A DNA stretch of 64,000 bases from Magallana gigas (GCF_963853765.1 NC_088857.1:13392001-13456000); one strand, 5' to 3'; counted from the stretch's first letter, positions 35,123-64,000 are shown. The notes: generated from the letters alone by a model not told the origin. Translations and numbers: made by a program.

Positions 35123-36008
35123 TCAAGGTTCTTTACCGCTGGCCTTTGGTGAGTCCAACATGACATTTTCCATAGAGTAATTAATATTAGTCACTGTGTA
35201 TGATGTTAATTTTTCACCATTGATGTCGGCTAGGAGCTCATCTACGGATTTACTGAAACAGGAAACAATACAAACATTAATATCCGACCTTTTTTCCTTC
35301 AAAGGAGGCATATTTGTGTTGTTTTAGTATCCTATTGAATGTCAAGGTTTCAAAGAGAAAAAAACCCGCCAAAGAATGATAATATTAAGAATATTTACAA
35401 CGAGAATTTAGCGTCGAAAGTACCCTCTGATATTTGCATTTTTCACTTTCAAAGTCTAAACAAACAACACTACATGTACATTTAAAACCATAGTCTCATA
35501 AAGAAGAATTCGAGAAAATGATGAAAAATATTTTTTGGTATCGAAAGATGTTTATTTTAATCGAAACTATGGGTTTCACTCAAAACGACATATTACATGT
35601 AATTTATTTGCAGTAAGATACAGTTGAAAAGTTTAGAAACAATCAGTGGTTCTATTTTCCAATCAGAAAACACCAAATTAAGGAGTATGTCATACGATAA
35701 AACGAAAAACAATTCATAAATATATTCAAATCCAAATATCTACAAACATTTTAGTTAAAAAAAATAACATTGTTATTATTTTGTGAGAATCGATTAATAT
35801 AAAGATATCTCCACAAATGTTGTAGAGATCATTTAAATTCATCTACAGATAACAAACCTGATAAAATCCTCACGGAATTGTTGAAGAAGAGCCATAGTAT
35901 ATAGCCCGGATTCCAATGGTTCATCGGCTGATGGTGATTGCACTTTACATAAAGCAAAGGAAATGATGAAATTATCTCCCCTTGGTTCTAATAAGGTCCG
36001 AGGGGGAT
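35123..36008 (-). CDS. Caspase small subunit (p10)-like exons of gene A
   Basis: PRGDNFIISFAL...SGLYTMALLQQF...KSVDELLADIN parallels caspase-3 PVEADFLYAYST...GSWFIQSLCAML...EFMHILTRVN. A phase-2 intron joins the two exons in frame. Confidence 0.7.
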
Positions 36009-39000: not shown

Positions 39001-42000
39001 TAGGCAGTTCGTACATGAATTTGCGTAGATCATCACTTTTGTGAATAAATTTGTCAATTCATAGTCCCCAGGGAAACAAAACAGTAATTAGGTTTGTTAC
39101 TGACTGACTTCAGTAATATATCGGGTTGATCAATATCATAGATGTTGAGGCGAAAGTATTGTGCATGTTTTTAAGAAAGTTTCTCACTCAAGGTACTTTT
39201 TCGTTTTAGATATATACTTTAATCGACGTACATATAAGTAATTGTGCCTGACGTTATTTCATATGATTTTTTTTTCACTTGAAATTTCATGTATAATTCA
39301 TATGAGGCATATTTTTTCATGATATGAAATGTTAAATTTGATGAATACTTTACACTAAGGTTGTCACGGACATTCCTTGTTGACCTTATTACCCGAAGTA
39401 TCTCATGATTTTGGAATAAATCAAAAGATGTCATTTGGGACATTTTTTTCTACATCAAATGTTCTAATAGGAATTGTCTATGAGTAATTTGTAGTTGATT
39501 TTTGTGCTCTTAATTACAAGACAGTTTGAAAATTTGATCACATTTTAAAGGACAATGACATTTGATAAGCAGACAGAGTGCATTATGTAATTCTAAATTT
39601 AATTTCTGTATTTGTGTGTTTGTACTAACCTAGGGATCAGAACATTGTACCAGACGTATAGTTGCATTTAAAACCAGACGACTGATCGCACTACAGACAC
39701 GCCAATTAATGCAAAAATAGACAGGTCTCTCTTTTCTCTTTAACTATGTCAATTGCTCTTCAAGATGGAAGTAATTGGAGACCATCACCTTTTAGATAGC
39801 CGTATTGAAGTCTTTATCTTAAAATACCAAGACCCAATGTATGTAAACAAGGAATTTCTTTAAATGTTTTTGTTACATGTATTTTCGTTTTAACTTCAAT
39901 AGATAAATTACTGGTAATTGTAAATGTATATAGTCGGACTTTGAAGCCAAGCATATGAAACGTCTTGTGTATTAGAAACTTACTCTGCATAGCAATAGGA
40001 ATTACTTTCACGTAGGCATATGGTATTTCAGGTATGTAATTCACCGGTAAACATCTCAGTTCTTTTGCAACATCAAAGGTCGTTGTCCTGTTATTCCGAA
40101 AAGACAAACAATCGGAGCAGACGACAACGAACTTTTCTAGCACCCCCTGTTTATCTACCGGAAACTGCCAGTCAACCCAAAACCCAGAGTGCGATTCCGA
40201 CATAGCAGTGACATGAACCGGTCTCAGTACATCTGAAAGAAAAATATATGATCATGAATAAAGCCATATCATATTTATAGGCATATAAAATCTTAGATAT
40301 TAAAGGTAACTTTGCACTAAAGAATTGAAAAACGAATTGGAAAGGTGTCCTATGAAAGTTCTTTCTCTTCTTAATTTTAAAAAATTAAAGATCTTCAAAA
40401 CCTAAATATGGTCCCACGTGGTAGCTGACGGGAAAGAAAACGTCATCGTATGACCTGATTGTTACTTTCACAACGTGTTCCGTATCCGGTCGGACATCTG
40501 TGATTGTGAATGATGTTTTCTTAGTTTCTTTTTCTGACCGTTTGGAAAGGGTAACATTGGCGTGGTCTGTCCAGGTCACAATATACGACAAATGGTTTGT
40601 TTTTCTTATCTCTGGAGGTTCCCAGAACACAAATATTTCTGTGTCCGATATCCTTTGCGCACAGAGACTTCGAACTGCTAATACATCCGTATCTGCGACG
40701 AAATATTACATGCTAACGTTTACGATAATGCAAAATAGAAACTGCAAAATAATTTCGGGTTTTTTAAAACTAAAATATTCGATTATACCTTTGACGATTG
40801 CTCTGGTTCTTATGTTTGCATAAACTAGATGTCCGTGTTGTTTTCGTTCCTTTCCAATAACTGGTGTTACCTGGAATCTATACTGTGTATTAGGTTCTAG
40901 GTTGGCAAATTCTATTCGAGAATTTGATTGGAATACTTCTTTCACTTTTTGAGAGCCTTTGAAACACTCCACGTGAAACTGAACCTGGTCTTCTTCGTGA
41001 TAACGCGGCGGTGTCCATTCAAGAATAACTTCTCTGGACGAATTCTCTGTCACCCGAACACTTCCATTTGTCATGGAAGGAACTAAAATTGTTTAAATTT
41101 AATGAATTAATCGTTGGCGCAAGAGCAAACTATTTTTTCTACCAAATTGGCGACATATTTGGTAAACAGTTTTAAATATATTTCAATTCGTGTCCTGTAT
41201 ACGCGAACTTGCAATCCAAACCAAATGTTTGATAATTTAAAATGACGAAAAAGATAAAATTTGTTTTAGAAATTTATAATAGTTAATTAAGGTCCGACCC
41301 CCCCCCCCCTCCTCCGAAATATGCTTAGATAATGTAAAAAAAAAAACCCTGAATAAAATGAGAAAGTGATACCTCTGTTTACGTGGACGTGTATGATGTC
41401 AACAAAAATAACTTTGGGTTTGTTTCCAAACTTGTCTTTGGTATGTTTGTAAATTTCGATGAAGGGAATAAACTCTTCGTCACTCCCGTAAAAGCCGTAA
41501 TAATCTCCAAAGCCGATGATGACACACACGAACATTTCGAATCCTTCAAACACTTTACTTCTATCTAGTGCCTTAAACCATTCACGAATTTTCTCCCTTG
41601 GCTGATTCTCAAGCTTGACAACAGTTTTAAAACGCAATGTTTTGTCATAAAAGTCAAATATTTCCCCTGAAAACAATATTTCAAGTTTAATTATATTCTA
41701 AGCAGCTAATTACCAGATAACGCATATAGATTTAAGAAAAGATGATTTTATTATCAAACGAGAAAACTTCATATGGATGTTTTGGTGATTTTTGATGTAG
41801 GAATTGATTTTCTGCCTGATATTCGAAAACATAAACCAACAATTTAAAGATTTTTTTCTTTTACTGAATGGTACGAATAAAAGAAATAAAAGTTCTTACT
41901 CGTTTTCACGCTTTGCTCAGTATGCATTCCGTCTTTATAGTCATTTACTATGATAACACACAGTTCTACAATTTAAGCAAAAATAAATTGTAAACGACGA

Positions 42001-42156
42001 AATAAAAAAAATTAGATTTGTGTCACTTTATGGTATTCAGCATTTAGACTTCTATACTTCTCTGGTCATATACAACGGGGGAATGTGGAGGGGAAAGAAA
42101 TTCACTTTCTTCAACGAATTCAAGACGTCTATCTACATTTAAATTTGAACAAACAA

Positions 42157-42238
<82 letters not shown>

Positions 42239-45200
42239 AGGCAAGAACGCATTTGTGTTTCTAGAACTGAATGCACTACTTCCTGAAGTGTGGGGAGCGT
42301 ACCTGTGCAAGCATGCGTTTGTTCTGCAGGAGAAATGACTTTGTCGCACAGTGCAGACACTTTCACCTCGTAGTCTGTCTCGGGCGTCAGGTTCTTGATG
42401 ATATAGACTTGCTTACTGCTCTCACCCCTCCGCCATCCTTTCTGTTCGCCTTTCTTTCTCCATTGTATTATGTACTGTATTCCGTCGAATTCATCCTTAA
42501 GTAACGTGTCCCACGTGACCTTCATCTCTTTACATCCTGGTGTCACGTTTAACTTGTGGACTCTTGGAATCTTGTAGTTGTTTTTCCGTATTGGTTTCCT
42601 TTCTGTTGGGATTAAAAAAAAGGTCTTTGTTAAAGACCACTTTTTTGAATTATTGATATTGCTAAGTCCGTTTGATTCACAATAGAAGCTCACCCTGAAC
42701 TGTTCTTGGGGAAGGGAGTACAAAAGTCTTTTGATGGCGGTCTGGCTGGTCAGTGACTTTCACTCCCCCTTCCTTTCCTTGCATCTCGAGACCCCCTTCT
42801 TCTTTTTCCAAGGAATCTTATTGATAAATTAAACTACATGTAGTTGATTTTGATACAATACACTGATTTAATAATATCATGAGGGTTTTGTACTGTGCTA
42901 CATAAAGATGATACATATGAAGCTATGCCAAAGAATTCATTTATAATATTGCACGTATTATTTTGCAAAGTAAGATCATGTAAAAATTCGTATTTGATAT
43001 CAGTGATAACAACGTTATCAATGACAAACGACACGCACGATTCTGATACACGAACGATCGCGCACTATACACGAACGATCGCGCACGACACACGAACGAT
43101 CACGCAGAATACATGGACAATCTTTAACTTACTAAATTATCACGATACACAAACGATAAGGATAAAAAACGCAAACGAATGATTTTACACCATTGAACAC
43201 GCAAAATGAAAAATATTTTTTAAGATTAGAATTAAGAAAACGTATCGATTTAATATGTTTTACAATGCCTGTGTTTTATTGAAAAGCGGCATGTACAATA
43301 TCTATGCACTAATTTATTTTTACGAAATAAGCGATAAGATAGGATTCACATACAAATTAAATTGTTTTGTCCCTATAACGAATTAATGTAAAGTTTTATC
43401 ATAAGGTGAAGAAAAGTAAGTGTAGAAGTAAAGATACTGCATAATCTTCACGAATTAATTTTAAATTACACACGAGTTGATGTTTATGTAAATCTAAAGT
43501 AGTGGTTTTTAAGAGAGATGGAGTAGTTGCAGGTACAGAAAAATGGACGTTCATTAGGAAACCTATGGGTGTGGAGACTTATTACAAGTATCTTGGTCTC
43601 ATATTTTCCTGTAGACTGAAATGGGTCAAATGTTGTAAGTCACTTGCACCACGGGCACAAAAAGCATTAGATATGTTTTAAAAACTCCTTTAAAATCCTG
43701 AATAACCGTGAACCTAGAGTGTGTTTTAAAATTTTTGATAGTATTATTGTTCCTATTCTAACATAGAGATCAGAAGTGTGGGGAACTGATATCATTGAAG
43801 AGGCTGAAGCTGAACAGAGTGACTTCTGTAAATGGATATTAAGAATAAACATAAAAGCTACTAATATAATGGCTTGGGGAGAATTTACGTTATAGACATG
43901 ATAAAACAAGTGAAATACTGGTTGAAAATACCAAACAAGAGGCCAATAGGCCTGAACGGTCACCTGAGTACCATAGCCCAAACCCAAAGTTGTGGAGGAG
44001 TGTCATAAATGCATTTAATTGAGTTCACTCCCTGCCTGCATTCTCTTAATCCTATATGTTTTCAAAGATAAACTATAACAAGTATACTACTTATTACTTT
44101 ACTATTATAAAGTCTACATGTTTATTTTAAGAAATTTAAAAACTGGTTTTGTTTCAAATGATAAAAAACTTGCATCACTATTTTGATCATACACCTTCTT
44201 TATTACATTATTATCTAATGATTAATTACTGAATATGAACAAGCCAAGGAAGATAACTCCATTTTGAAGAAGCAAGGGAAGATAACTTCATTAACTGTTA
44301 TACTCCTTTTCCCTGAACTCCTTTCAAATGCTTTCACAATATAATATCAATAACTTTGATGGACAGCTTCATTATTTTTCTGTTCTAAACATGTGAATTA
44401 ACTCATTTCTTTTATTGAAATTCCTGAGCAGAATAAAATAAGACAAATACATAACCCTCTTCCCAGCCATAACCCTTGCCTTACATGCTGGTGACAAAAA
44501 ATATTATTAAAGATGACAGGATAATTTTTTCCTAAATATGCAGCTAGTTTTTATTCCATGATCTGTGTATGTAGATAAGATTTTTAAACATTATGTGTAT
44601 TAACACTATATGGCCATATTGCACCCCCCCCCCCCTCCGACTTGAACCCCTGACCCAGGGGCCATGAATTTCACAATTTAAGTAGATGAGTTTGTGGACA
44701 TCATAATCATGCATTCAGTTTTTTCCCAACATATGTGAATAGAGAATGTTTTCTAAGATATAATACATTTTCACTATATGGCTTAATCGGCTCCGCCCAT
44801 GGGCCTCAAATCCTGTCCCAGGGGTCATGAATTTCACTATATAAGTAGAATAGTCAGTGGACATCATAACCATGCACTCAGGTTTTTTCAAATATATATG
44901 GGATTAGAGAAGACGATTTTCTAATAATTAATACATTTTCACTATATGACCAAAGTGACCCCACCCTATAGCCTGAACCCCTGATCCAGGGCCTATAAAT
45001 TTCACAATTTTAGTAGAGGGCTTCATGGACATCATAATCATTCCTCACATATGTGGGAGTAGAGAAAAGGATTTTTGAAAATTTAGCTTTTTTGCACATT
45101 TTGCCCCTTCTGTGCCCCCCCCCCCCCCCCCCCCAGGAAAGGTAGAGCCATAAATTTCATAATTAAGAACCCTCTTACCATAGAGATGCTTCACACAAAA

Positions 45201-45297
45201 ATGGTAACAATTGGCCTTGTGGTTTTCAAGAAGAAGTTAAAAATGTAAAGTTGTTACTCACAACGCACAAACGCACGACGATAGACGAAGACCAACT

Positions 45298-45329
<32 letters not shown>

Positions 45330-47423
45330 GCAAATGAAAACTTCAAGATACCCAAGACAGTGTTTTGAGATGCTTTATAATTTGGATTTGTGCAGCAGTC
45401 GTTCAGCTCCAAACTGGGTATCTGAACTGAAATCAGTCTCAAATCACTACGGCTTTGGGAACGTGTTGTTAATTGGTGGACCTGGAGATCCAAAGGCCTT
45501 TCTGTCAGAATTGAACCAAAGGATGAGAGACTGTGCCTCTCAGAAATGGAAATGACAGTTAGCAAATTCACCAAAGTGTGCTTTCTATGTTATATCAAAA
45601 AAAAACCCAGCTTACATGTGAGAGTTGCCTCTCTTTCCTATGCTACCCCTTAAAACAGGCATTGGCTTCTTTTAGGTGTTCCTTACACAAACTACGTATC
45701 GAAGAGGCTAGATTTGAGGGAATTGATAGTGTAGATGAATTATATCAGCTTTGCAACTTAAGACAAATTGTCAATGAAATACATTTTCAATTTCACTGTC
45801 TAAAGTTGGATGACTTAAGAAAGAATTTTCTAAAAGAAACAGCCAAATCGTCTCCTATGAGACGTTGAGTCTGACATCATCATGATTATTCACGCAGTCC
45901 GTGATTTTTCTTAAGCGGCTGAAGGTTACGACCAATTTCAAAATATTTCAGTCCTGTCAGTTTCTTGTCAGTTTCAGCCGCTGTAGATTTCGACCAATCG
46001 ATGAAGGGGCGCGTAGAATTCAGTTTGGCCGTTTCTAAAGAGCTATGAATTTACGAAAGTTTCCGTAAGAAATAGAGGAAATCATACTCGGTAGATTTAA
46101 ATATATGAATATGATGCCTAAAGGAACAGTGGGCAATGGCCTTTAAGTACCAAATAAACATCTTATCCCTCTGGTATTTATTTAGTCCGATTTTCTACGT
46201 ACGATTTAATTATGCAAATTGGTAAGTTTGTTACCTTGTTTCAAAGACTTTCGATTTTACACATTCCATTATCAATTGATTGAATTCTATTTATTTTAGA
46301 TTTGAAAGCGTCTTAGTTTTAAATTATAATTAATGGTTAAACAATGTAACAGAGGTATACTTGACCGCTTTCATTTAACGCGTCTCTCTTGCTCTACGCA
46401 GACTGATAATAATTAAATGCATGTGTCAAGATACAAGGGGTGCTTTATTTATACTAATAACAAAATCATGCAAAATTGAATCGACCGATCAAACGGTTAA
46501 TGAGCTGTTGAAATACTTACTAAGAGATAAAAATTAAAAAGGGTTAGTGCCAACGTGATACATAAATGTAAACAATTGTCAATATTCTTCTATACAAGTT
46601 CGAAATCACATTTTTGCATTGTTTAAAAAACTACTCGTTTTTTTTTAAGGATAAATCCTGGCATTCCGTAGAAAAGGTACAAAACGAAAATAAACCACAC
46701 GATCACGCACGGAAAAACGCAAACTTATTTTTCTGATAAATTGATCATCCCGCACGATACCGGAACGACCCCCCCCCCCCCCCCCCCCCGGTACACGAAC
46801 TTTTTAACACGATTTGTTTTTCAACAATCACGTTGTTACCACTGTATCCATTTACCTGTTTTAAAAAATTAGTAATCATTCGTATACTTTCAAAACAGGT
46901 AAAATATATTGGTTGTTTAATTAGTCATTGCTTAAAGAGTGTCTAAATAGCATGATAAAGGATTTTATTTGTATTACTGATTGGTGCAATTATCGCAATT
47001 TACTGCGTTGAAAGTCAACAGTTTTAAAGGTTTATTGGGACACAGCCTATCTGAACGCAAAACATGACATTTCAACAAATGAGTGATTGGGAGAAACCAG
47101 CAATGCACAGGGATGTACATGTACATGTACATGTTGGACGGCCATGCAACTTTGTTTCGAAAATCATGGGCCAGGTTACAAAGCTGTCCTAAGATTCACC
47201 CTGAGATATGTCTTAAGACTATCCAAAGGTTAGACAAATGAAAACCTTTTACAATACCGTGGACCCGGATCCCGTATTTTCCGCGCACACTTGCGGTCCA
47301 AATTGCAACGCTGTTTAAACATCTGTCTCAGGTAAAAACCGCGTGCCCCCGCGGTTCAATCGTCCATTGATAATTTTTTTTGATAATTTTTTTGATAAAA
47401 AAATTATAATTTTGTCATGTTGT

Positions 47424-47461
<38 letters not shown>

Positions 47462-47494
47462 TACAACATGACAAGTTGTCATGTTTTAAATTTT

Positions 47495-47525
<31 letters not shown>

Positions 47526-50500
47526 ACAACATGACAATTTGTTCGACAAATTGATTTCAACCAGCTCTATAGAATGACTAGTTGTAGCTTTATATAAAAA
47601 AACAATGTGGCATGACGTCGACGTTGTCTCACAAGTATCACAAATCTATTCAAACTTAGACTTATTTTAATAAAAAATGATTTTTACGATTTTTTTGGAT
47701 ATATTTAAAATTTTAAAATGCACTGGTAACGGGTTTAATTATACATTAGTTGTGTTAACGATATTAATGAATAAAAAAAAATATACTTATATCGTGTCTA
47801 ACACTCTAACGAATTAAATTTTGAAACCGGTGAAAAATAAGACTGAAATATCTGATGTTTTCCTGTTTTTCTTAAACGGTTTTGATATATTACTTGTACT
47901 AACTTATAAAACGTTAGAACCGGCGCCATTAAATAAACTGGAAATTCGCCATTTCCTCTGTGATTTCACTTCTGTAAAAAGACTTCGAAGATAAAATAAA
48001 GAGTATACCTTATTAGTACATTCAGTTTTGCGGTTGTGGTTAGTCAGAAACATTGTATTTTATACGCATGCCCAGATCGCATTTTCCATTATTATACAGC
48101 TTGTGGAAAGAGAGAAAAAAATGCTTAAAGCTTACGACCAATTTTGAAATCAATATAGAAATCGTACATAGATATAGCTAACATAAATTTAAATCTTTAT
48201 CAAATGTTTCTCAATTTCATGATCTTAATGATAATGATTTTAACTCTTTGTCCGGGGATTTAAGAAACCCACCATTGCTGTTATAGTCAAATTATTTCAT
48301 GCGCTTTGTCTTTAAATATCTGTTAATCTGAGCATCTTGTGCATGCAATGAGTTTAAAGGGACATGGGGATAATAGGTGCAGAAACCCCGTGTCCATCAG
48401 ACACATCACAGTACATTTGATAACAAATGATTTAATAACAGGAATTTGTTGTATATGCATTAAGGTATTACGTTAATAATTTTGGTAGGTTAATTTTGTA
48501 AGTTTTAGCGTCTCTTACATTGTCATCTGTCAAGGTTTGTTAATGTACTAACTAACCTATTTCTGATACATCATATTTTGATTTAACATCATAAAACATA
48601 CCAGATTTTTCTCTAGTTGTCTCGAGGTCCATTACAGATGGTTTACTAGAGAAATACATAAATCTCTATAAATTCGATCGCAATAGCATTAGCATACTTT
48701 ATTGGTTATCACTTTTTTGTTTCGAATAAAAATCAAATCTTTAGACAGAAATGAAATAATATTAACTTACTTAGTACATTTTAGAAAGAGCTATCGCATC
48801 CAAATTAATCCGGGCCTCTTTCCAAATGAGGATGGATATTGAGCCTAGCTTCATTTAATATCCAAATCTGTTTGTGATTGGTCGATTTACTGGCCTGATT
48901 ACCAATATCTATATATCAAATTTCAATTATCTTAAAGTGGCCATTGTGTGTGCTTCCCGCTTTTTATACAACCACGAAGCGGTTTAAACCTTTAAGAGAT
49001 AAATGTAGCATACGCCATGATTCTATATTTCGAGGTAGAAGGGAAAATAAAAGGAGACTTTAGTACTCTTCTATCTAGAAGCATTAGATTTACTTTGTGG
49101 CAATTGATAGATCCAACAGTGATGGTACATGGCACATAAACAATGTATTGCATATGTTACTATCCTTTTGTGTTGTGGGAATAAGAGATATGTTTTATAG
49201 AGAGGCATGCATATTGAAAATAACGACCAAAAATAGAATAGACTAGATCTCGTTACGAGTAACGAGTAGGTCTTCCGTCCGATTTTGGTTTATATGATAC
49301 AATGAAATATCGATACTCTCTGCCAAATCTGGGATCCTGGTGAAACTAGGTTTTTTGTCTCGAGACCGGAAGCGGACGAACAAAAGTGATTCATGAAAAC
49401 ATAAGCTGTTTTTTTTATACATTTGCTTAGTGCACATAACTGTTTATCATGCTAGATGAAACACCAAAGACTATCGGTTAAACTTGTCAAAAACATGAAC
49501 TGTTTGAACTCTTCTGGTGAGTACCGGAAGTGACAATTGACAGAATAAAACCCGTTAAACACATCTTCAATCAATTGTCTATAATTCATAAAAGTTCGTG
49601 TTCATTCACTTACAGTGACTAAAATCTCGCGGGTATCAAATTTGTAAAAAGGAAAGGTACCTAAGATATTTGATAAATCTCACCGGAAGTGGAATATGTT
49701 TGTTTATTTAGCATATATAAGATCGTGTAATTATAGAGCGATATTTATTCCATGTAAAAAAAAATAAGGAAAAAAAGGTATTTTAAGTGCTTCCGGTGAC
49801 GACTGGAAGTGACGACGATTTAAACAAAATAATGTAAACACGGATACATACTTAGGGTTATCATCCTACAAAGTTTGGTTGTTCATCACCGTTTTTTAGA
49901 TCTCGTGGAGTCATTGTTTTTTTGTCTCTTGACAGGAAACGGACAAACGGAAATGCTCAGTGAAAATAAAAAGTTAGTACTTCTTAAACATTAGACACTT
50001 GTACTTTATTGTTTATAAATTTTACTAAAATTGTCAAAGAAAAACAGTTAAAAACAGTTAAAACTTTCAAACAGCTTGATTTGTTTGAACCCTTCCGGTG
50101 AGGACCGGAAGTGACGGTTGAATGAAATGCTATTAAAATGAAAGCTATTAAACGCATTTTCTACCGAATGTCTATTATCTACATAAGTTTCGTGTATTAA
50201 TCACTTGACTGTCTTAGATCTCGTGGGTAAAACATTTATTAAAAAAAACGCTTTCTGAGATATTTGAGATATTTCACCGGAAGTAGAATTTTTTGTTTTT
50301 ATTTAACATCGGATACATGGCATATGTAAGGATTATTACTTATATTTCAATTCTATATGAACCAAATTAAATGCAAAAGAAACAATAATTTTTGAAGGGC
50401 TTCTGGTGACGACCGGTTATTATGACGAACAAAACAAAATAGTTTAAAGACATCTACAACTATAGGTCTATAATCCTACAAAGTCTGAATGCTCAAGTTC

Positions 50501-55420: not shown

Positions 55421-56260
55421 AAACAAGCGGCCCATGGGCCACATCGCTAACATGAGCAACATGAGACATAATAGAATTAGCTTTATGAAGTCATATATAA
55501 AATATTGGGACAATGAATGAGAAAAATAAACCCTGTCTTCAAAATTTCTCCAGATGTTCTTATGTATAGTCCCGTTTGTAACTTGATGATTTCATAGTTT
55601 TATCACATATTGAGTATTGTCATTCTATGTTTTAAAGATTTTTCTCTACATATTTATATGTAAAATTCGACTATCCCTCCAATTGCGACCCCACCCTACC
55701 CAGGGATCATGATTTAAACAAATGGAATCTACACAAGTTACAGCTTTTCTAGTCCATGTTTCTCTGTATAATTCTTATGTAAAAAATCGACCCCCGTTGT
55801 TGTCCAATTCTACCAATTCTAAAGTTACAGCTTTTCTGGCCAATAAATAATTTTCTCCATATATATTCCAATGTAAAAATTCGACCCAAATTGTGGCTCC
55901 ACCGTATCCCCGGAAAACATCATATGACCATATTTGAATCTACATTACTTTATGATGCTTCTATAAAAGTAACAGCGTTTTAGACCAATTTGTTTTTGAG
56001 AAGTACATTTGTAATTATATAAACAATTTTTCATAATTCTTAATTATGTCTCTTTAAAAGATAGCATGGTCCTTCATTTTAACAAACTTGTATCCCCTTT
56101 ACCTGAGGATGCTTTTTGCAATATTTGGTTAAAATCGACTCTATGATTCTGAAGAAGTCCGAAATTAAAAAAAACCTGACGGATGGACAGAAAGGCAGAC
56201 TGACGGATGCCCGACTAAAAGTGATAAGTTCACTTGAGCTTTCGGCTCATGGGAGCTAAA
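55421..56260 (-). mobile_element. HINE/Helentron-associated element, same family as 4740-6227
   Basis: AAACAAGCGGCCCATGGGCCACATCGCT at one end and TCACTTGAGCTTTCGGCTCATGGGAGCTAAAA at the other. Confidence 0.75.
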
Positions 56261-56462
56261 AAAAATCTCTGAATTGTAATTTCAATACCCTTTTAAAGTA
56301 TATAATATACCCCAGACTACATTTATTGTAGAGGAAAGAGACCACTAACTCGCAAAATACTGGTAAAGGTAGGAATATCATTTTAAAGAATATGAATAAA
56401 TTAGACCGTTTTGATTCCATTTTCAACATTTATTTTTCTTGATTCAGACACTGAACCAACTC

Positions 56463-56464
<2 letters not shown>

Positions 56465-56534
<70 letters not shown>
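56465..56534. repeat. (AG)n microsatellite
   Basis: Direct reading. Confidence 0.95.
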
Positions 56535-56537
<3 letters not shown>

Positions 56538-58658
56538 CTGACGAAGCACTAAAACTGTTTATCTTTCATAAAGACTGTGTATAGAAGAGTTACTCTATTA
56601 AAATGAATCAAGTGTCCCGCCAATCAATTCAACATCGTACGTCTAAGAATATTAAATATGCGCGTCCTATCAATAGCCTCTACCGTGTTTATTGAAACAG
56701 GCATTTTTCTGAAGTAAAGCATAATTTTAGATGTGTTCTGTTATCTGAAGATACCTGCAAAAGAAAACTAATCGTAATGTTTTTGACTGGTCTTAAACGT
56801 ACTTAACATTATATAAATTATGTATATATTGTATATGTCCCCACGTGAGAGTGTTAAAGCAAAGAACCTTTAATTTATTAGGAGGGCTGAATGGTCGCCG
56901 CCATTTTTAGACCTAATTAGCCAGAAAGTTGCTTTTTTTGTTTAAATTATGTTTTCAGACTCTAAATAAGATACCTATAAATCATTAATTCTAAATAATT
57001 CGTTACATTAATGCACATAGTTTTGCTAACACTATGAATATAAAGGAAATACTGCCAATTCCAATCACATCCACGTATCCTTCATGGTGAAAGGTAAGTT
57101 GTTTTTTGATAAAAAAAATCCTTAATTTCAATAATACAGTTTTTGGTTTCTGGTAATCTTTTGTTTACTAAAGTATTTTATTTATTTATATAATATACAC
57201 ATTTTCATAATAAATCCTATATGAACTATGCGCGGATTTTTTACCGGTTCTGAGGTCCATTTTCGGTAACTTAAATATATTAACTTAAAAAGTTTGTTTT
57301 TCCTAAAAAGGGACATGGGTCCCATCCCTTCTAACGAACCCCCTCAAGGTCCGCGCATGTGAAAGAACCATGTTAAATATATGTATTTTAATGTTTCCTT
57401 CCCTGAGACAATGTTTAGATAATGAAAACCTTTTTCCTTACCTTCGGGAACAAGTTCTATTCTTTTAAATTTTCTGGCTGAAAAGAGATGTTTCGAATAT
57501 ATACATGTACTATAGCAAAAAACCCGTATATATACCAATGTGAAAGAATAAACATGAGTTATTAACCTCATAAAGTAAAAAATAATAACGCGTTTAAGAG
57601 GTTGCTGTGAGGATGTACATTATTTTAAGTGATATGAACATACGCACTTATTCGATTTTGGAATCCACTAAGTAAAACAAAAATGTTAGGAATGTTAACG
57701 AAGTTGACTGTTAAACACTGAAATTATAATAGATATTAAAATTGTAGAAAGAGTGATGAATATATTATTAATAACGTAATGCATAGCAAGACTCGCTAGC
57801 TAATAAATAGACCGTTCAAAAATATCGACACAGCAGGAGTTATGACACCATATCATTAGAGTTGTTCATGTAGTCCTAAGGCGTAGGGAGGACAAGATGC
57901 AATGCAATGATTTACAATGGATTTGAAAATAAAACATCAGTTTTTCTTATATGAACAGTGCTTTTAATAATTCAAATTGTAAGTTTTGTCATATTTCAGC
58001 GTATATGTACATGTAACTGTAAGAGTTAACACTAATAATCCTTTACGTGTATAAAATCTAAAAACTTATCCCACAAACCCATTTTCAAGTCTTTGTATGG
58101 TTTTCTCCAACGTTAAGAGGAACACTGTCGTTTTCTTTTAGTCTGTAAGTAACGTTTTAGAAAAATGAATTCCTCAAAACAACAAAAAGGAACAGAAGGT
58201 ATTATGATTTAGTCCTATTTTTCTAAATTTGAAGAAAGCTTGAACGTCAAAAAGAGAAGTAAATTTGAAAATAAACAGAAATTTTATCATCATCAAGACA
58301 TCTACCTTGACAAATGTGCTATTTTTCTCCATATTTCATCCGTTACTCAAACGCAAAGTTCACAGGAGACACAATCTCTCTGGCACATACTCATTTTGTG
58401 TGACATTTTGTCCAGTGTGTATTCTGTAACGCTATTTAAAGGACAACACGTTCGGCAGATCCAGCCTTTTGATACTTTATCGTTAAAGCATTGGCTTGAA
58501 TGAAAAGAATTAAGACAGATCCCAGATCAACATTGCCATTGTTCTAACAACCGTCACATACAACATCTCAGGAGTCCATTTAAATCTGTGTTGAAACAGA
58601 CGGAAAGGATTCTTTTTTAAATTATAATTAATGGTGGATGATGGACTAAACATTTAAT

Positions 58659-61600
58659 ATGGCGTCTACTAGCGAGGATATAGAAGAAAACATAGATGAA
58701 AACGAGAACACTGAGAAAGACCCCAATGAACAAGAGAGCGAAGAGAAAGACCCCAATGAACAAGAGAGCGCAGAGAAGGACCCTAATGAACAAGAGAACA
58801 CAGAGGAAGGGCTAAATGGTGGAAATCATGAAGAAATTACGCCTAGGGTAAAGTTTTATGAATTGTATTTGGCCGATAATTACATTTTTCACCCTGATTC
58901 ATTCTGCTATATGTAATTAAATGTTTTTGTCTTTCAACTTTAAGACTCTGGAGACATTACCCGAAGAACCAAGCGATCTTAAAAACCCAGGTAACAAAAA
59001 TCAAATAGTAGTAATTGCGATTATAATTTAGGATACTTAGGATCCCCTGACGACTTTAGTCATTAACAGAATACTAAACAATTAATCGAGCCAATTCTGT
59101 ATTATTTTGCTGCCAATTAGCTTGAATAGGGGTTTGAAATTAATTCTGGATCTCACATCAGGCGTTTTTGTTTAATTTCGTTTAACCCGCTCTGTTCACA
59201 ATTTTATATCAAACAAAAGGTTAAGTGCATCGATGATTTTAGTTATTGAAACTTTTATAAATCACATTTTCAACTGTTAAATTTGTAGTAATGTTAATTA
59301 CAAATATGTAAAATAATGTTAAATATGTTAAAATATAGGGGAGATAAACAGTTCTACAATGAATGAAAAATAAACATTTAAATGCACGTTTTCGAAATAA
59401 TTTTTAAAACCAGATGAAGTTCTTGTGCCAACTGACCTAAAAGCTGAAATAGCCGCCAACGAAATCTTACTGACATGGGGGCCACCAGCGGGTCTATCTA
59501 AACACCAGGTCTCTTATGAGGTAGAATGGAAGAAACAATCCGATTCACAATGGACTAAGGCAATCACCCGGGACCACAAATATCTGATAAAGAACCTGGC
59601 TACAGAGACTGATTACGACATGAAAGTTTCGGCGTACGAGAAAATCATCGATCCACAGGAACCAGAAGACTCGGAGCCCGAACCAGAAAAAGAGAAAAGT
59701 AAATAATAAGAATCTTAATGTGATATCAAAACAGTGATTGCACGCTTCAAGTAAGAGTGCAAAGTTTTGTTACATGTATTTTCATGGTATGTTTTTGAAA
59801 TATTTTTTTTTATTCAGAGTTATTTGAACATATGACAATTTTTCCTGAAAGTAAGTATATTTTCTTTTACAAGAACTAAATAAAACCAAATTATTTCTTT
59901 GATAACTCATCTATAATAGCTTCTATTTTTAGAAGTGTATATTGTTCAATTTTGTTTCATTTTTTCCCCTAAAGATTCGACCGTTAGTCAAGTCGGAAGT
60001 GAGGTAGAGGCATTCACACGTAAGAAATAACTTTATTTTGAATATTATAGAGAACAAAATCCGATCTTGTATGAAAAAATATAACTGCATTTTAAAAAGA
60101 TAAATTTTCGTATGTATTTTTTCCAATTGATAACTACGATTGATATAATTTGAAAAATCTCATTTTGATTCTCAAATTTTATTTTAGGAAAACTTGCCTG
60201 AAATATATAATTATTTTTTTTGTGTTTCAAAATCTTTCAAGCTTTGGCTTTGGTAATAACTTCTAAATATCTTATAAAATTAATTAATCAAAATTCAACT
60301 GTAAACAAGTTAAATTCAAAATTAATATAAATAAATTAGTATTGAAGTAAAGTCGGTTACATGTATTCTTCTATTTTCTATTTGTGATATCCTTTAACTG
60401 AAAATTAAAGTAAAACACATAACTAGGTCACTGAGTAAATGCATCTATTGAAAACAGAGAGAACCAAGGAACTAGCAAAGATCGTAGCTGAACTAGAAAG
60501 AACTCTGGAGTATCAAAAGCGTAAGTAAATAAACCAAAATGAATTTGTTAAAATGAATATCCACAAATGATTTTAATAAATTGAATATATTTTTATCAGT
60601 TATATTAATTACTTGCATAATTTATACTCTTGACGAAAACGTATTCATATGATTATGTATAAAATCAGGTCTCAACAAAGGTGAAAAAATACCAAAAAGG
60701 CTTGAGTCTAAACTAAATATGGGTAAGTTGTGATTTTAAACACTTAAGTCTACTATTTTCTCGTAGGATAAAATACTTTCATTTATCAATCCTTTTTAAC
60801 ATACTTGAGTTGAAATACCAAATGAAAATTGAAGGGTTGTTAAATTTAGAAAAATATAAATTTAAGACGCATTTTAGCTAACAATTAAAATAGATGAAGA
60901 TATCGATGTGACAGCAAAAAAGAGTTAAGATCCAGAGTTGCAAAAAATATAATGAAATGTTGAAATACGTGTATTAAATAGGAACTCTCACAGAGTGGAA
61001 CGTTGTGATTTTCATATACCTTTTGTTTCAAATAGAAATTCTGAAACCAGTCAGAAGGAAAGATTGTCCAAAAAGTAAGAAAATATGATTGAGATAATAG
61101 AAAACGGAAAAATTATGATCCATATCTTAGTTCAAGAAGATAGAAAAACTCATATTTTATTGTATTCAAGTATTAATATTTTGTTTTAAGAATGTAATAG
61201 AATTTATCTTACACAGTATACATTATTAATGTTACTGTTAAAAAAAGGAATTCTCTCAAATGTCGACGTTTTTTGAACAGGAATTCTTTTCATTATTACT
61301 AATGATATGTTTGCAAGATCTCCACAACTAAAAGCTTCCGCCAGAATGCAAAGTAAGTTTTATGTTTATTTTAAAACAATGATACCTTAAAGAATTCGTA
61401 AAAGGTATTAGAATTTTAGAGAATTTGAAGAAAACATCTTATATAGTATCTTAATTTCGGTAAAACATCTGGATAAAACTATGTTTATCATTAGACACAA
61501 TATTTCTTTCTATAGCTGAAATTACCCGACTTTTTGAGCGCGATTGGAAAGGAGAAGGTGATATTGTTAGAAGAATCAGAAATGGCACTCGAGCACAAAT

Positions 61601-63991
61601 CTTGAATGAATTCGAAAAACTACGACAAAGATTGGACTTTGACAGCCATAAAATGTTCATCTGCATAATTCTCAGTTACGGAAACGTGGAGGGGTTCAGG
61701 ACAATGGATGAGGAAATGATCGAGTATCAAGAGATCTTCTCTATGTTCAATGGATCTAATTGGTTGCATTTCAGTGAAAAACCAAAATTTTTCTTTATTG
61801 ATGTTCAACCAATGAAAATGGAAAGAACAGGTTTGTATTGAAATCATAAGGAAATACCACTATGAGGAATCTTGCTTGATTAAAGAGATGTCTTCGATCC
61901 ATGTTATTTAAATAAAACGATCAAATTATGATTGAATTATTACTCTTCATCTTAGGTGATTATCCTCAAGACCTTCGTGTGAAGGAACTTTCAGAGGACG
62001 AAGTTGAGATCCGGTGGAAGCCACCGAAAATGTTTCAGAGCAGCCAGCTTAATTACTTAGTACACTGCTATAGGTTAAATGATCAAAAGGTTCATACTAA
62101 AACCCATGAACTCATTGCGAAGAAAACCAGTTGTGTTCTCGATGAAATGCAAAAGGACGTGACTTATAAAATAAGTGTATGGTCCATTCAGGCAACAACC
62201 CAGAAAAAGAGAGGGCTTCCAAGTCAAACCAAATATACTTTGAGAGAAAAGGGTATATATTCTTAAAGAGTGACAGTCGTTTGCTCTTTGAATTCCAATT
62301 AAATTTAAAAATGTGCATATTGATAGCCAATGTTGCTGTTTTTAATTTCTTGAATATCTTAATTTTTTAACATTTGGTTAAATTGTAGTTTTAGCTCCAG
62401 TATCTGAAAGGTTAACAGCGAAATCAACAACATACGACACAATAACAATTTATTGGCCTTTACCGTTGGAGAATAGAAAACCGCCGTATTTCGCGAAATA
62501 CAAAGAAAAAACAGCTGATAGTTTTAAAAGAACACTTTTACCTCCCAATGAGACTGAAGTGAATCAGGGCCACGTTTTGAACTTTTTAAAGAGTAACACT
62601 GAATATATTATACGACTTTTTGCTGGAAACTCTAGAATTCTCAACGAAGTGAAAATTAAGACACTGGCAAAACGTAAGTACCATTAAACACATATTAAGA
62701 CTTTGCATCAATGCACTGGATTTAAAACCCTATTTACACGATGTGAATTACATAATCTCTTGAACAATCTTCTGAGTTGGATATACCTCTATTGATTAGT
62801 CGGACATGAAGATGCTATAGAATAAGTATATTTACTATTTTTAAAATACAATAAGAAAACTGTCAATTTGATCTAGAGAATCTTGGTTCTATTTCTTTCC
62901 TGTCATTCTGACATAATGGATGGAATAAAAAAACTACCTTGCTATCTTCTTAATATTATTAAAACTAACCGTTTGTTTATTTATCGGAAGATCAGAGGAT
63001 TGACGTCATTTAACTTCATATACAGATTAGAATATTTCAATTTTCATGTGGTTCGATCAAACTTAACATATCCTTAATTATCTTTATTTAATAATTTTGT
63101 GATGATTTTCTCATTAGATTTGAAATTGCAAATTTGAATGTTTCTCGTAATGCCTTTTTAAGATCAACCCAAAGACCTTAAAGCAAAACACATAACACCT
63201 TTTGAGATTGAGTTAACATGGGCAACCCCAAGCGTATATCTTCGCGGAAGCTACAGGTACCACGTGTTTTATCAGATGAAGAACTCCACAGAGAATAGTG
63301 TTGTTACGCTCGTTGAACAACACACATTGACTGACTTAATACCAGATGTTGTTTACACTATATGGGTAACAGCTGAAAAGGACAAATTTATGGGAGATCC
63401 GTCGGACTCAATAGAGTGCCACACACCAAGATGTGGTAAGTTACAACGATGGTTTACTGCCTTTTAAGTTTCTAATTTGTTTAAAAATTTCAGTCGAAGT
63501 GAAGATTACTAAAAAGAGAGTGAAGATAATTGTTTTGTTGTTGGTATATTTGATAATTTTTTATAGATTCTCGAGGTCTTGAAAAATTGCTTATGTTTCT
63601 TCTATGCAAGGTTAATTAATTATAGAACTAAAAGCAAATTAATTTTTTTGAGAATTCAATTAAAGGTATACATCGAATTTCTCTAACGAATAATTGCAAT
63701 CAGGTCCCCAGAATTTACAAGTAGATGCCCATGAACGGAGTATACGTGTGTATTGGGACGAGGCTGTTGTTCCAGCCGAGACAGAAAGCTTAAGTTATAG
63801 AGCTCGTCTTCAAAATGATAATATCCGTCCAATAGTTGGAGAGGTGCTTCCTACGCCCGATGCCAAGTACAATTACGCCTGTTATTTTCGGGATCTATGG
63901 ACGGACACGCAATACACTCTAGTCATAACCACAGTGATTGACGAGGGAGACTGGGACCCACCCACCGAAGTACCAATCAAAACGAGGCGAG
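58659..63991 (+). CDS. FN3-interrupted pseudo-caspase B, paralogue of gene A: acidic repeat - FN3 - linker - p20-like - >=4 FN3; continues past the right edge (~750 aa modelled)
   Basis: In-frame GT/AG exons: 58659-58847, 58945-58990, 59414-59698, 59975-60019, 60458-60520, 60669-60722, 61036-61074, 61281-61352, 61516-61830, 61956-62252, 62389-62673, 63163-63435, 63704-63991. Confidence 0.88.
58713..58802 (+). repeat. Three 30-bp coding tandem repeats (EKDPNEQE(S/N)x) in exon 1 of gene B
   Basis: GAGAAAGACCCCAATGAACAAGAGAGCG.. three times. Confidence 0.92.
61281..61830 (+). CDS. Caspase p20-like exons of gene B, catalytically dead
   Basis: RILFIITNDMF; MFICIILSYG (His to Tyr); KPKFFFIDVQPM (QACRG lost). 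Confidence 0.88.
61956..63991 (+). CDS. Four tandem FN3 exons of gene B
   Basis: YPQDLRV...IRWKPP...; ...IYWP...FLKSNTEYII; QPKDLKA...LTWATP...LIPDVVYTI; GPQNLQV...VYWDE...LWTDTQY. All are phase 1/1. Confidence 0.9.
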
Positions 63992-64000
63992 GTCAGGCTA

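What the first reader, a model, noticed from the sequence alone, without database searches (positions are those of the whole stretch)
41373..61830. Both paralogues lack the His/Cys dyad, with different substitutions but intact frames
Seen: the SHG motif is GFG in A and SYG in B; QACRG is DIIHV in A and DVQPM in B. Both have Asp in place of the Gln. The genes are strongly diverged, yet no stop or frameshift occurs in about 970 and 750 codons. Inference: catalysis was lost before or early after the duplication, and the fold has since been kept by selection for a non-enzymatic role.
Basis: partly seen in the sequence, partly recalled or inferred. Interest (0 to 1): 0.7.

Follow-up and report, generated by a model that had tools for sequence, protein, structure and literature searches.

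The report
Two dead caspase paralogues in oyster
Two neighbouring Pacific oyster genes encode caspase-like proteins that have lost both catalytic residues yet are transcribed and strongly conserved, while a third copy next door keeps the residues, so these are maintained "dead enzymes", not decaying genes.

Summary
The window is Magallana (Crassostrea) gigas.

- **Gene A:** LOC105343466, minus strand, 18 coding exons, 998 codons. The catalytic His is Phe and the Cys is Ile (GFG / DIIHV).
- **Gene B:** XP_011449159, plus strand, 16 exons, 849 codons, not about 750. Its last two exons lie beyond the window end. His is Tyr and Cys is Gln (SYG / DVQPM).
- **Evidence of function:** Both are spliced and transcribed. 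Both are under purifying selection (dN/dS about 0.09-0.10 overall; p20 half 0.02 for A, 0.07-0.13 for B). Their altered motifs are kept in Crassostrea virginica and Saccostrea.
- **Fold:** Structure models of both give caspases and the FLIP(L) pseudo-caspase domain as best matches.

A third paralogue, C (LOC105343464), lies about 5 kb past the window end and keeps His and Cys (THG / DTCRT). The family ancestor was therefore dyad-bearing, and loss came after the first duplication. Two independent losses are favoured, but one shared loss is not excluded. Asp in place of Gln is a family trait shared with C, not part of the inactivation.

The parts
35123..58082 (-). Gene A (M. gigas LOC105343466) coding span: 18 exons, 998 codons. 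Layout: N-terminal tail, FN3, caspase p20-like half, six FN3-type exons plus a short linker exon, caspase p10-like half.
   Evidence: Spliced model checked against transcript-derived protein P0151 (991/998 identical). All introns are GT-AG.
41900..41965 (-). A, first p20-like exon (beta1 region, ...CVIIVND...)
41373..41666 (-). A, main p20-like exon carrying both former catalytic positions
   Evidence: Pfam PF00656 scores 37.7 bits for the full protein (cut-off 21.4). Splice sites are. dN/dS for the p20 half is 0.017.
41509..41511 (-). A codon TTT = Phe282 at the catalytic His position (GFG)
41386..41400 (-). A codons for DIIHV at the QACRG position; Ile321 replaces Cys
   Evidence: C. virginica has DISHV and S. 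echinata has DIINI.
36635..41082 (-). A, FN3 array inserted between the p20-like and p10-like halves (exons 41082-40789, 40692-40402, 40232-39984, 38618-38562, 37854-37570, 37425-37156, 36922-36635)
   Evidence: Pfam fn3; gene model
35858..36008 (-). A, p10-like exon (LEPRGDNFIISF...)
   Evidence: Aligned with B, C and canonical caspase small subunits. Confidence in the AF2 model is low here.
35123..35252 (-). A, last exon (end of the p10-like half and stop codon)
42303..42602 (-). A, N-terminal FN3 exon
58083..58658 (.). 576-base spacer between the divergent start codons of A (58082, minus) and B (58659, plus); candidate bidirectional promoter
   Evidence: The promoter function is inferred.
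58659..64000 (+). Gene B (XP_011449159, annotated 'titin') coding span inside the window: exons 1-14 of 16. The p10-like exon and last exon lie 140-620 bases beyond the window end (G000:C5:13456140-13456620).
   Evidence: Model of 849 codons, all GT-AG. Every intron in the window is seen as a joint in RNA-seq contigs. Stranded poly-A reads are consistent with a plus-strand RNA.
61281..61352 (+). B, first p20-like exon
61516..61830 (+). B, main p20-like exon carrying both former catalytic positions
   Evidence: PF00656 scores 54.3 bits. It is 87% identical to the S. echinata orthologous exon. dN/dS is 0.07-0.125.
61677..61679 (+). B codon TAC = Tyr330 at the catalytic His position (SYG)
61800..61814 (+). 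B codons for DVQPM at the QACRG position; Gln373 replaces Cys
   Evidence: S. echinata and another oyster have DVHPM.
61956..63991 (+). B, four FN3 exons inserted between the p20-like and p10-like halves (61956-62252, 62389-62673, 63163-63435, 63704-63991)
59414..59698 (+). B, N-terminal FN3 exon

Best explanation
A and B are functional pseudo-caspases. They are expressed, selectively maintained paralogues with a caspase fold that cannot carry out cysteine-protease catalysis.

They belong to a three-gene cluster that I found only in oysters (Magallana, Crassostrea, Saccostrea). In these proteins the caspase domain is split: the p20-like half and the p10-like half are separated by four to six FN3 domains, and still pack into one caspase-like domain.

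The third member, C, keeps His and Cys. The ancestor was therefore dyad-bearing. A and B lost the dyad after the first duplication and before Magallana, Crassostrea and Saccostrea diverged. I put two independent losses at about 0.7.

All three already lack the aligned Arg/Gln/Arg that bind the substrate's aspartate in caspases.

Inferred mechanism: the dead domains serve as binding or regulatory modules inside soluble, intracellular FN3 proteins. The single most likely mode (about 0.3) is FLIP(L)-like pairing with the dyad-bearing paralogue C through the caspase dimer interface.
For: - **Dyad substitutions:** placed by HMMER against solved caspases and by a 36-sequence alignment.
- **Gene integrity:** intact 998- and 849-codon spliced frames.
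- **Expression:** full-length transcript contigs in clusters of 92 (A) and 107 (B) member sequences. Every B intron in the window is seen as a joint in RNA-seq contigs.
- **Selection:** dN/dS is 0.096 (A) and 0.085-0.097 (B). The p20 half gives 0.017 and 0.07-0.125. C gives 0.053. Against Saccostrea, dS is saturated while dN is only 0.12-0.33.
- **Conserved motifs:** GFG is kept in four A orthologues. SYG with DV[QH]PM is kept in five B orthologue sequences.
- **Family match:** PF00656 is above its gathering score for all three proteins.
- **Fold:** B's p20 and p10 halves given as separate chains score ipSAE 0.82, against a best control of 0.03. That mark was reached by 51 of 78 solved complexes and 2 of 108 mismatched pairs. 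The runs agree in at least 72% of contacts and the partner's pLDDT is at least 73. The strand before the former Cys pairs with the first p10 strand.
- **Structural matches:** the best VIA-align hits span both halves. B: pro-Sf-caspase-1, Z 20.6, 214 residues aligned, rmsd 3.9; FLIP(L) protease-like domain, Z 20.0, 191 aligned, rmsd 2.5. A: caspase entries, Z 16.5, 168 aligned, rmsd 2.9.
- **C keeps the dyad:** THG / D[TN]CRT.
- **Location in the cell:** no hydrophobic segment or signal peptide.
Against: - No biochemical data exist. Inactivity is inferred from the residues alone.
- A's p10-like half is modelled at pLDDT below 50 and evolves faster (dN/dS 0.22).
- The complex prediction pass may reflect the model's memory of solved caspase p20/p10 complexes.
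- The order of duplications is unresolved. The caspase-domain trees change root with the outgroup sample, and A+B as a clade is not rejected (p-AU 0.26, 0.54 and 0.14).
- Pairing of A or B with C was not tested.
- C itself lacks the canonical S1 residues and may not be a conventional protease.
Confidence: 0.8

Rival explanations
1. One shared loss. The dyad was lost once in a common ancestor of A and B, shortly after it split from C, and the two then drifted to different residues.
For: A+B as a clade is not rejected (p-AU 0.26). With 23 outgroups the constrained A+B tree is even 1 lnL unit better. His (CAC) to Tyr (TAC) to Phe (TTY) is a stepwise codon path, so A's Phe could derive from a shared Tyr.
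Against: - B and C are much more alike than either is to A: 44% against 26% in the p20 exon, and 35% against 26-27% in the FN3 parts.
- B and C share four FN3 in the insert, tandem position and orientation.
- In the FN3 paralogue-rooted test, A+B is the worst topology (delta lnL 5.6, RELL 0.06).
- The residues at the Cys position (Ile ATA, Gln CAA) share no codon path.
Confidence: 0.25
2. The caspase fold in A and B is a purely structural clasp. It closes the FN3 array into a loop in a cytoskeletal or scaffold protein, with no relation to C or to proteolysis.
For: - The proteins are intracellular and rich in FN3, and are annotated by similarity as titin or tenascin.
- The FN3 parts are as constrained as the caspase parts.
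- A's former Cys loop varies between species (DIIHV, DISHV, DIINI).
Against: B's p20 half is the most conserved part of the protein between Magallana and Saccostrea (82% against 65% for the FN3 insert). This includes the former active-site loops, which suggests a specific surface is used. The three genes stay clustered in Saccostrea as well.
Confidence: 0.35
3. A and/or B still catalyse a reaction with another nucleophile or another chemistry.
For: Nothing was measured, so it cannot be excluded. A has a His two residues after the former Cys position in Magallana and C. virginica.
Against: That His is Asn in S. echinata. The only conserved Cys near the site is the structural one in the beta3 strand, which active caspases share. 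The canonical S1 Arg/Gln/Arg are absent at the aligned positions.
Confidence: 0.05
4. A and B are decaying pseudogenes whose frames are open by chance or recent origin.
For: None found.
Against: - The chance of open frames is about 1e-34 and 1e-29.
- dN/dS is about 0.09.
- Orthologues are intact in species with saturated dS.
- Spliced transcripts are present.
Confidence: 0.01

Closest known systems
FLIP(L) / CFLAR, the vertebrate pseudo-caspase
   Same: - It is a paralogue of active caspases with a complete caspase-like fold in which both dyad residues are replaced (His to Arg, Cys to Tyr; PMC7586951).
- It is kept by selection.
- Its protease-like domain (3h13_A) is among the best structural matches: Z 20.0 with rmsd 2.5 for B, and Z 14.4 for A.
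- A dyad-bearing paralogue is encoded nearby.
   Different: - There are no death-effector domains (Pfam finds only fn3 and Peptidase_C14).
- The replacing residues differ (Phe/Ile and Tyr/Gln).
- The caspase domain is interrupted by 4-6 FN3 domains.
- The origin is independent, within oysters.
- Heterodimerisation with the live paralogue is untested here.
Canonical animal caspases (Pfam PF00656, MEROPS C14A)
   Same: - Sequence match is above the Pfam gathering score.
- The order of secondary-structure elements is the same.
- The best structural matches are caspases, ahead of MALT1 (Z 17.3) and metacaspases (Z about 15).
- The family forms one clade beside 13-23 ordinary caspases (100/97 and 100/100 support).
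   Different: - His and Cys are absent in A and B.
- The aligned S1 residues (Arg, Gln, Arg) are absent in A, B and C.
- The intersubunit linker is replaced by an FN3 array.
- There is no CARD, DED or DSRM prodomain.
Oyster 'Cg3/7-like' caspases with degenerate p20 active sites (Vogeler et al. 2021, PMC7836458)
   Same: They are oyster-lineage caspase homologues with 'highly diverse p20 active sites', many reported as having only a p20 subunit.
   Different: That survey maps those genes to other linkage groups and does not mention fibronectin or FN3. None of the six A and C identifiers searched (four XP accessions, two gene symbols) appears in its text or supplements. Its screen excluded proteins whose BLAST hits looked non-caspase.
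Pseudo-orthocaspases of cyanobacteria (PMC6426788)
   Same: They are C14-fold proteins in which the His/Cys dyad is replaced, His by Tyr as in B, yet the genes are widely retained (abstract seen).
   Different: They are prokaryotic, p20-only, and unrelated in architecture and origin. I did not read the paper beyond the abstract.

Membership tests
Peptidase C14 caspase fold (Pfam PF00656) | Significant profile match above the curated gathering score | tested here: met
   A 37.7, B 54.3 and C 58.2 bits against a cut-off of 21.4. Only profile positions 1 to about 143 of 233 (the p20 part) are matched.
Peptidase C14 caspase fold (Pfam PF00656) | Complete alpha/beta fold with a small-subunit (p10) half packed on the p20 half | tested here: met
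   B: complex prediction on the p20 and p10 halves gives ipSAE 0.82 against a best control of 0.03. VIA-align gives Z 20.6 over residues 247-849. A: Z 16.5 over residues 203-978, but the p10 part has pLDDT below 50. This is model-level evidence only.
Active caspase (catalytically competent C14A) | Catalytic His in the (S/T)HG motif | tested here: not met
   A has Phe282 and B has Tyr330. C has His.
Active caspase (catalytically competent C14A) | Catalytic Cys in QACxG | tested here: not met
   A has Ile321 (DIIHV) and B has Gln373 (DVQPM). C has Cys (DTCRT).
Active caspase (catalytically competent C14A) | S1 pocket residues for P1 aspartate (Arg in the loop after beta1, Gln of QACxG, Arg of the p10 S-x-R motif) | tested here: not met
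   None of A, B or C has these at the aligned columns, and Gln is Asp in all three. Loop alignments are uncertain, and B and C have Lys/Arg a few residues away.
Pseudo-caspase of the FLIP(L) kind | Caspase-like domain lacking the dyad, retained under purifying selection | tested here: met
Pseudo-caspase of the FLIP(L) kind | Tandem death-effector domains for recruitment | tested here: not met
   Pfam finds only fn3-type domains and Peptidase_C14.
Pseudo-caspase of the FLIP(L) kind | Heterodimer with the catalytically competent paralogue | not tested
Paracaspase / metacaspase (C14B) | Closer in sequence and structure to MALT1 or metacaspases than to caspases; acidic S1 pocket | tested here: inconclusive
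   Caspases outrank MALT1 and metacaspases in structure (Z 20 against 17 and 15). Among the 60 sequence matches listed for C (of 94 at E up to 0.01) all are caspases. The Asp two residues before the Cys position resembles my recollection of MALT1, but that is a lead from memory, not a test.

The most novel reading that the evidence does not exclude
Oysters evolved, independently of vertebrate FLIP, a self-contained regulatory trio. It has one dyad-bearing caspase-fold protein with an altered, non-aspartate pocket (C) and two dead paralogues (A, B) that pair with it through the caspase dimer interface. All three are built on an undescribed architecture in which the activation linker between p20 and p10 is replaced by an FN3 array.
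Probability: 0.25. Interest if true: 0.75.

Novelty: new variant of a known kind. Interest (0 to 1): 0.55.

Why it matters
Pseudo-caspases are rare. The FLIP(L) review calls FLIP(L) the only human one (PMC7586951).

This locus offers one live and two dead copies side by side, conserved across at least three oyster genera. The two dead copies carry different replacements at the same two positions. That makes it a compact system for asking how a protease fold is re-used after catalysis is lost, and whether such loss recurs in parallel.

The genes are currently annotated as 'tenascin-R', 'titin' or 'collagen alpha-1(XII)'. Neither the searched identifiers of A and C nor any mention of fibronectin/FN3 appears in the main bivalve caspase survey, so oyster cell-death and immunity studies have overlooked them. 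The Saccostrea echinata reference model even fuses B with C and skips B's caspase-like exons.

Tried and rejected
- **Foldseek:** the full-length B model returned only FN3 arrays, which is uninformative for the caspase part. VIA-align was needed.
- **C. virginica DNA:** The look-up of encoding contigs has no record for the C. virginica A protein P0006, so no C. virginica DNA was available for A.
- **dN/dS against Saccostrea:** unusable as a ratio because dS is saturated.
- **Rooting the three paralogues:**
  - 13 outgroups give ((B,C),A) with 86/74 support.
  - 23 outgroups give (B,(A,C)) with 77/69 support.
  - The AU tests reject nothing.
  - The FN3 paralogue-rooted test favours B+C but does not reject the others. 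A's long branch could bias this test towards B+C.
- **Wider distribution:** none of ten longer, more distant hits combines Peptidase_C14 with fn3.
- **Literature:** searches by gene and protein identifiers found nothing. 'Caspase + fibronectin type III + oyster' found nothing relevant.
- **Other ORFs:** Pfam scans of other long ORFs in the window found nothing.
- **Neutral decay and chance open frames:** rejected.
- **Transmembrane or secreted protein:** rejected. The maximum 19-residue hydropathy is 1.21 and there is no N-terminal signal.
Full report
**What the locus is.** The window is G000:C5:13392001-13456000 of a 564-Mb, 29-contig assembly. Contig length (57,274,926) and protein names identify it as Magallana (Crassostrea) gigas. 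GC content is about 33% and coding sequence is in short exons.

The finding spans two divergently transcribed genes.
- Gene A is LOC105343466, with proteins such as XP_011449160/61, annotated 'tenascin-R' or 'uncharacterized'. It runs on the minus strand.
- Gene B is XP_011449159, annotated 'titin'. It runs on the plus strand.
- Their start codons (58082 and 58659) are 577 bases apart.

**Gene models.** I used transcript-derived proteins found in the protein collections as guides: P0151 (998 aa) for A and P0157 (849 aa) for B.
- A resolves into 18 coding exons (58082 to 35123) with 998 codons. All 17 introns are GT-AG, and 991 of 998 residues are identical to P0151.
- B resolves into 16 exons with 849 codons, all GT-AG.
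- B's last two exons, the p10-like exon and the terminal exon, lie 140-620 bases beyond the window end.
- At the window's base composition a codon is a stop with probability 0.076. Open frames of this length have chance probabilities near 1e-34 and 1e-29.

**The observation.** The exon 41373-41666 (minus) and the exon 61516-61830 (plus) each match Pfam Peptidase_C14. The full proteins score 37.7 and 54.3 bits against a gathering score of 21.4.

HMMER alignments to solved caspases and a MAFFT alignment with 13-23 ordinary caspases put the following residues on the catalytic positions.
- A: Phe282 (GFG) sits on the catalytic His. DIIHV sits on QACRG, so Cys becomes Ile321.
- B: Tyr330 (SYG) sits on the catalytic His. 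DVQPM sits on QACRG, so Cys becomes Gln373.

**A third paralogue changes the reading.** A search of the whole genome with the B exon found a third copy 11.6 kb downstream of B's p20 exon, on the same strand. I fetched that DNA.

Gene C is LOC105343464 (XP_011449158, 790 aa). It occupies G000:C5:13460985-13472076, starting about 5 kb past the window end. It has the same architecture but reads THG and DTCRT. Both His and Cys are present and align exactly with those of caspase-3.

C also has Asp in place of Gln. So do a few unrelated caspase-like proteins with DACRG. The Asp is therefore a family trait that predates inactivation.

All three paralogues also lack, at the aligned columns, the two arginines that hold the P1 aspartate in caspases. 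Even C is unlikely to be an aspartate-specific protease. This rests on loop alignments and is tentative.

**Architecture and fold.** Each protein has these parts in order:
1. a low-complexity N-terminus;
2. one FN3;
3. a linker;
4. a p20-like half (two exons);
5. an FN3 array (four in B and C; six FN3-type exons plus a short exon in A);
6. a p10-like half (two exons) with the conserved LEP..NF..(A/S)(Y/F) strand.

- B's p20 (residues 248-381) and p10 (762-849) halves, given as separate chains, are predicted to bind with ipSAE 0.82, against a best control of 0.03. That mark was reached by 51 of 78 solved complexes and 2 of 108 mismatched pairs. The runs agree in at least 72% of contacts, and the partner's pLDDT is at least 73. 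Strand 365-371, which ends at the former Cys, pairs with strand 774-779, as beta4 pairs with beta5 in caspases. The pass may partly reflect memory of solved caspases, so it shows likeness.
- The AlphaFold model of full-length B has mean pLDDT 68.8, with p20 at 67-89 and p10 at 65-86. Its best VIA-align matches all span residues 247-849:
  - pro-Sf-caspase-1: Z 20.6, 214 residues aligned, rmsd 3.9;
  - the FLIP(L) protease-like domain: Z 20.0, 191 aligned, rmsd 2.5;
  - other caspase entries, Dronc and CED-3.

  These rank ahead of MALT1 (Z 17.3) and metacaspases (about 15).
- The A model is poorer, with mean pLDDT 57.3, p20 at 56-82 and p10 below 50. It still gives caspases as its best matches over residues 203-978 (Z 16.5, 168 aligned, rmsd 2.9).

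Foldseek on the whole model saw only FN3 arrays. None of the three proteins has a hydrophobic segment or a signal peptide, so they are predicted to be soluble and intracellular.

**Expression.** The 90%-identity clusters of A, B and C hold 92, 107 and 76 member sequences. Most are full-length ORFs on 2.4-4.0 kb intron-less Logan contigs, that is, transcripts.

I laid RNA runs on window 58600-64000.
- Every B intron in the window appears as a GT..AG joint at the predicted positions in RNA-seq contigs.
- Poly-A reads all lie with the first mate on the minus strand, as expected for a plus-strand RNA in a standard stranded library.
- Reads and contigs ending at 63991 continue into the p10 exon beyond the window.

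**Selection.** I took transcripts of congeners from Logan. These were A at 94.7% protein identity, B at 94.5% and 91.3%, and C at 92.0%. Codon alignments gave Nei-Gojobori estimates.

| Gene | dN/dS overall | dN/dS, p20 half | Notes |
|---|---|---|---|
| A | 0.096 (dS 0.27) | 0.017 | 1 non-synonymous against 12 synonymous codon differences in 120 codons; p10 half 0.22 |
| B | 0.085 and 0.097 | 0.125 and 0.068 | two congeners |
| C | 0.053 | 0.039 | |

Against Saccostrea echinata, dS is saturated while dN is only 0.12-0.33. B's p20 half is the best conserved part of the protein (82%, against 65% for the FN3 insert).

The altered motifs are themselves conserved.
- A has GFG in M. gigas, a congener, C. 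virginica and S. echinata. Its DIIHV motif reads DISHV and DIINI in the last two.
- B has SYG with DVQPM or DVHPM in M. gigas, two congeners, S. echinata and another oyster.

The S. echinata reference protein P0153 fuses B with C and omits B's caspase-like exons. Those exons are intact in the genome (L030:5288-6028 and 11612-12020).

Neutral decay is excluded.

**When was the dyad lost?** Because C keeps it and the outgroup caspases all have it, the family ancestor had it. 'Lost before the duplication' is wrong. Both losses predate the split of Magallana, Crassostrea and Saccostrea.

One loss requires A and B to be sisters. Any other topology requires two losses.
- The caspase-domain tree, with the dyad columns removed, recovers the family as a clade (100/97 support).
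- With 13 outgroups it gives ((B,C),A) at 86/74. The AU test does not reject A+B (p 0.26).
- With 23 outgroups the root moves to (B,(A,C)) at 77/69. The constrained A+B tree is then 1 lnL unit better. This domain does not resolve the root.
- In the FN3 parts, B and C are 35% identical, against 26-27% to A. The three stems are 2.34 (A), 1.28 (B) and 0.68 (C).
- Present-day rates in the FN3 insert are alike: dN to Saccostrea is 0.22, 0.24 and 0.21.
- A test that roots each FN3 position by the other positions favours B+C (RELL 0.70). A+C follows (0.23, p-AU 0.33), then A+B (0.06, p-AU 0.14). A's long branch could bias this test towards B+C.

Taken together with the shared four-FN3 insert and tandem orientation of B and C, I put two independent losses at about 0.7 and one shared loss at about 0.25.

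**How it most likely works.**
- Shown: A and B are transcribed, spliced and selectively constrained, and they lack both dyad residues.
- Supported by models: both keep a complete caspase fold closed around an FN3 array.
- Inferred: they are non-catalytic.

For the mode of action I see two readings.
- FLIP(L)-like pairing with the dyad-bearing neighbour C through the caspase dimer interface (about 0.3). In FLIP(L), His is Arg and Cys is Tyr, and the pseudo-domain heterodimerises with caspase-8 (PMC7586951).
- Use of the dead domain as a binding surface or structural clasp, independent of C (about 0.35).

B's very high conservation of the former active-site loops favours a specific binding surface. 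A's variable former Cys loop fits a looser role.

**What is known.** The main survey of bivalve caspases lists 35 C. gigas caspases (PMC7836458).
- It describes a 'Cg3/7-like' group with degenerate p20 sites on other linkage groups.
- It never mentions fibronectin or FN3.
- It removed candidates whose BLAST matches looked non-caspase.
- Its text and supplements contain none of the six identifiers of A and C that I searched.

Among ten longer, more distant Peptidase_C14 hits I scanned, none carries FN3. The profile search of 1.84 billion representatives gave only six proteins at E below 1e-30, all members or fragments of this family.

I therefore file A and B as a new variant of a known kind: pseudo-caspases on an apparently undescribed split architecture.

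Noticed in passing
outside the window: G000:C5:13460985-13472076 (L027, L026): The third paralogue C (LOC105343464, 790 aa) keeps His and Cys (THG / DTCRT). At the aligned positions it lacks the Arg/Gln/Arg that bind P1 aspartate, and it has Asp at the Gln position. If it is active, its specificity is probably not caspase-like.
   Followed up: partly
L030:3001-50371 (Saccostrea echinata, GCA_033153115.1): The reference protein 'collagen alpha-1(XII) chain-like' (P0153, 1216 aa) is a fusion of the B and C orthologues. It skips B's p20-like and p10-like exons, which are intact in the DNA (L030:5288-6028 and 11612-12020).
   Followed up: yes
window 58083-58658: A and B are head to head with start codons 577 bases apart, so a shared bidirectional promoter is likely. 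The same head-to-head arrangement holds in S. echinata (L029).
   Followed up: partly
window 42817-52477 (large intron of A): NCBI and UniProt list shorter A isoforms (967-981 aa) that begin MDLETTREKS..., MYFSSKPS... or MATLFLKC... and join at the exon 42816-42694. This implies alternative first exons or promoters inside this 9.7-kb intron. I did not locate them.
   Followed up: no
window 41290-41330, 44550-45200, 46650-46920; also beyond the window at about 80.5-81.6 kb on the same scale: Short open segments containing poly-G tracts (translated as runs of Gly, such as ...GGGGGG...) recur in introns and downstream of C. This looks like a dispersed repeat family.
   Followed up: no
window 42140-42260; 56470-56560; just past the window end (about 64064-64115): Simple repeats sit inside or next to the genes: a TA-rich dinucleotide-type run (translated YIYIYI) in A's intron after the FN3-1 exon, and GA-type runs (translated RERERE) in A's upstream intron and in B's intron before the p10 exon.
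   Followed up: no
window 1983-2131: A run of 149 N (gap or masked).
   Followed up: no
proteins P0052, P0084: Two unrelated caspase-like proteins in the representative library carry DACRG, with Asp for Gln and the Cys kept. Asp at this position is therefore not unique to the oyster family.
   Followed up: no
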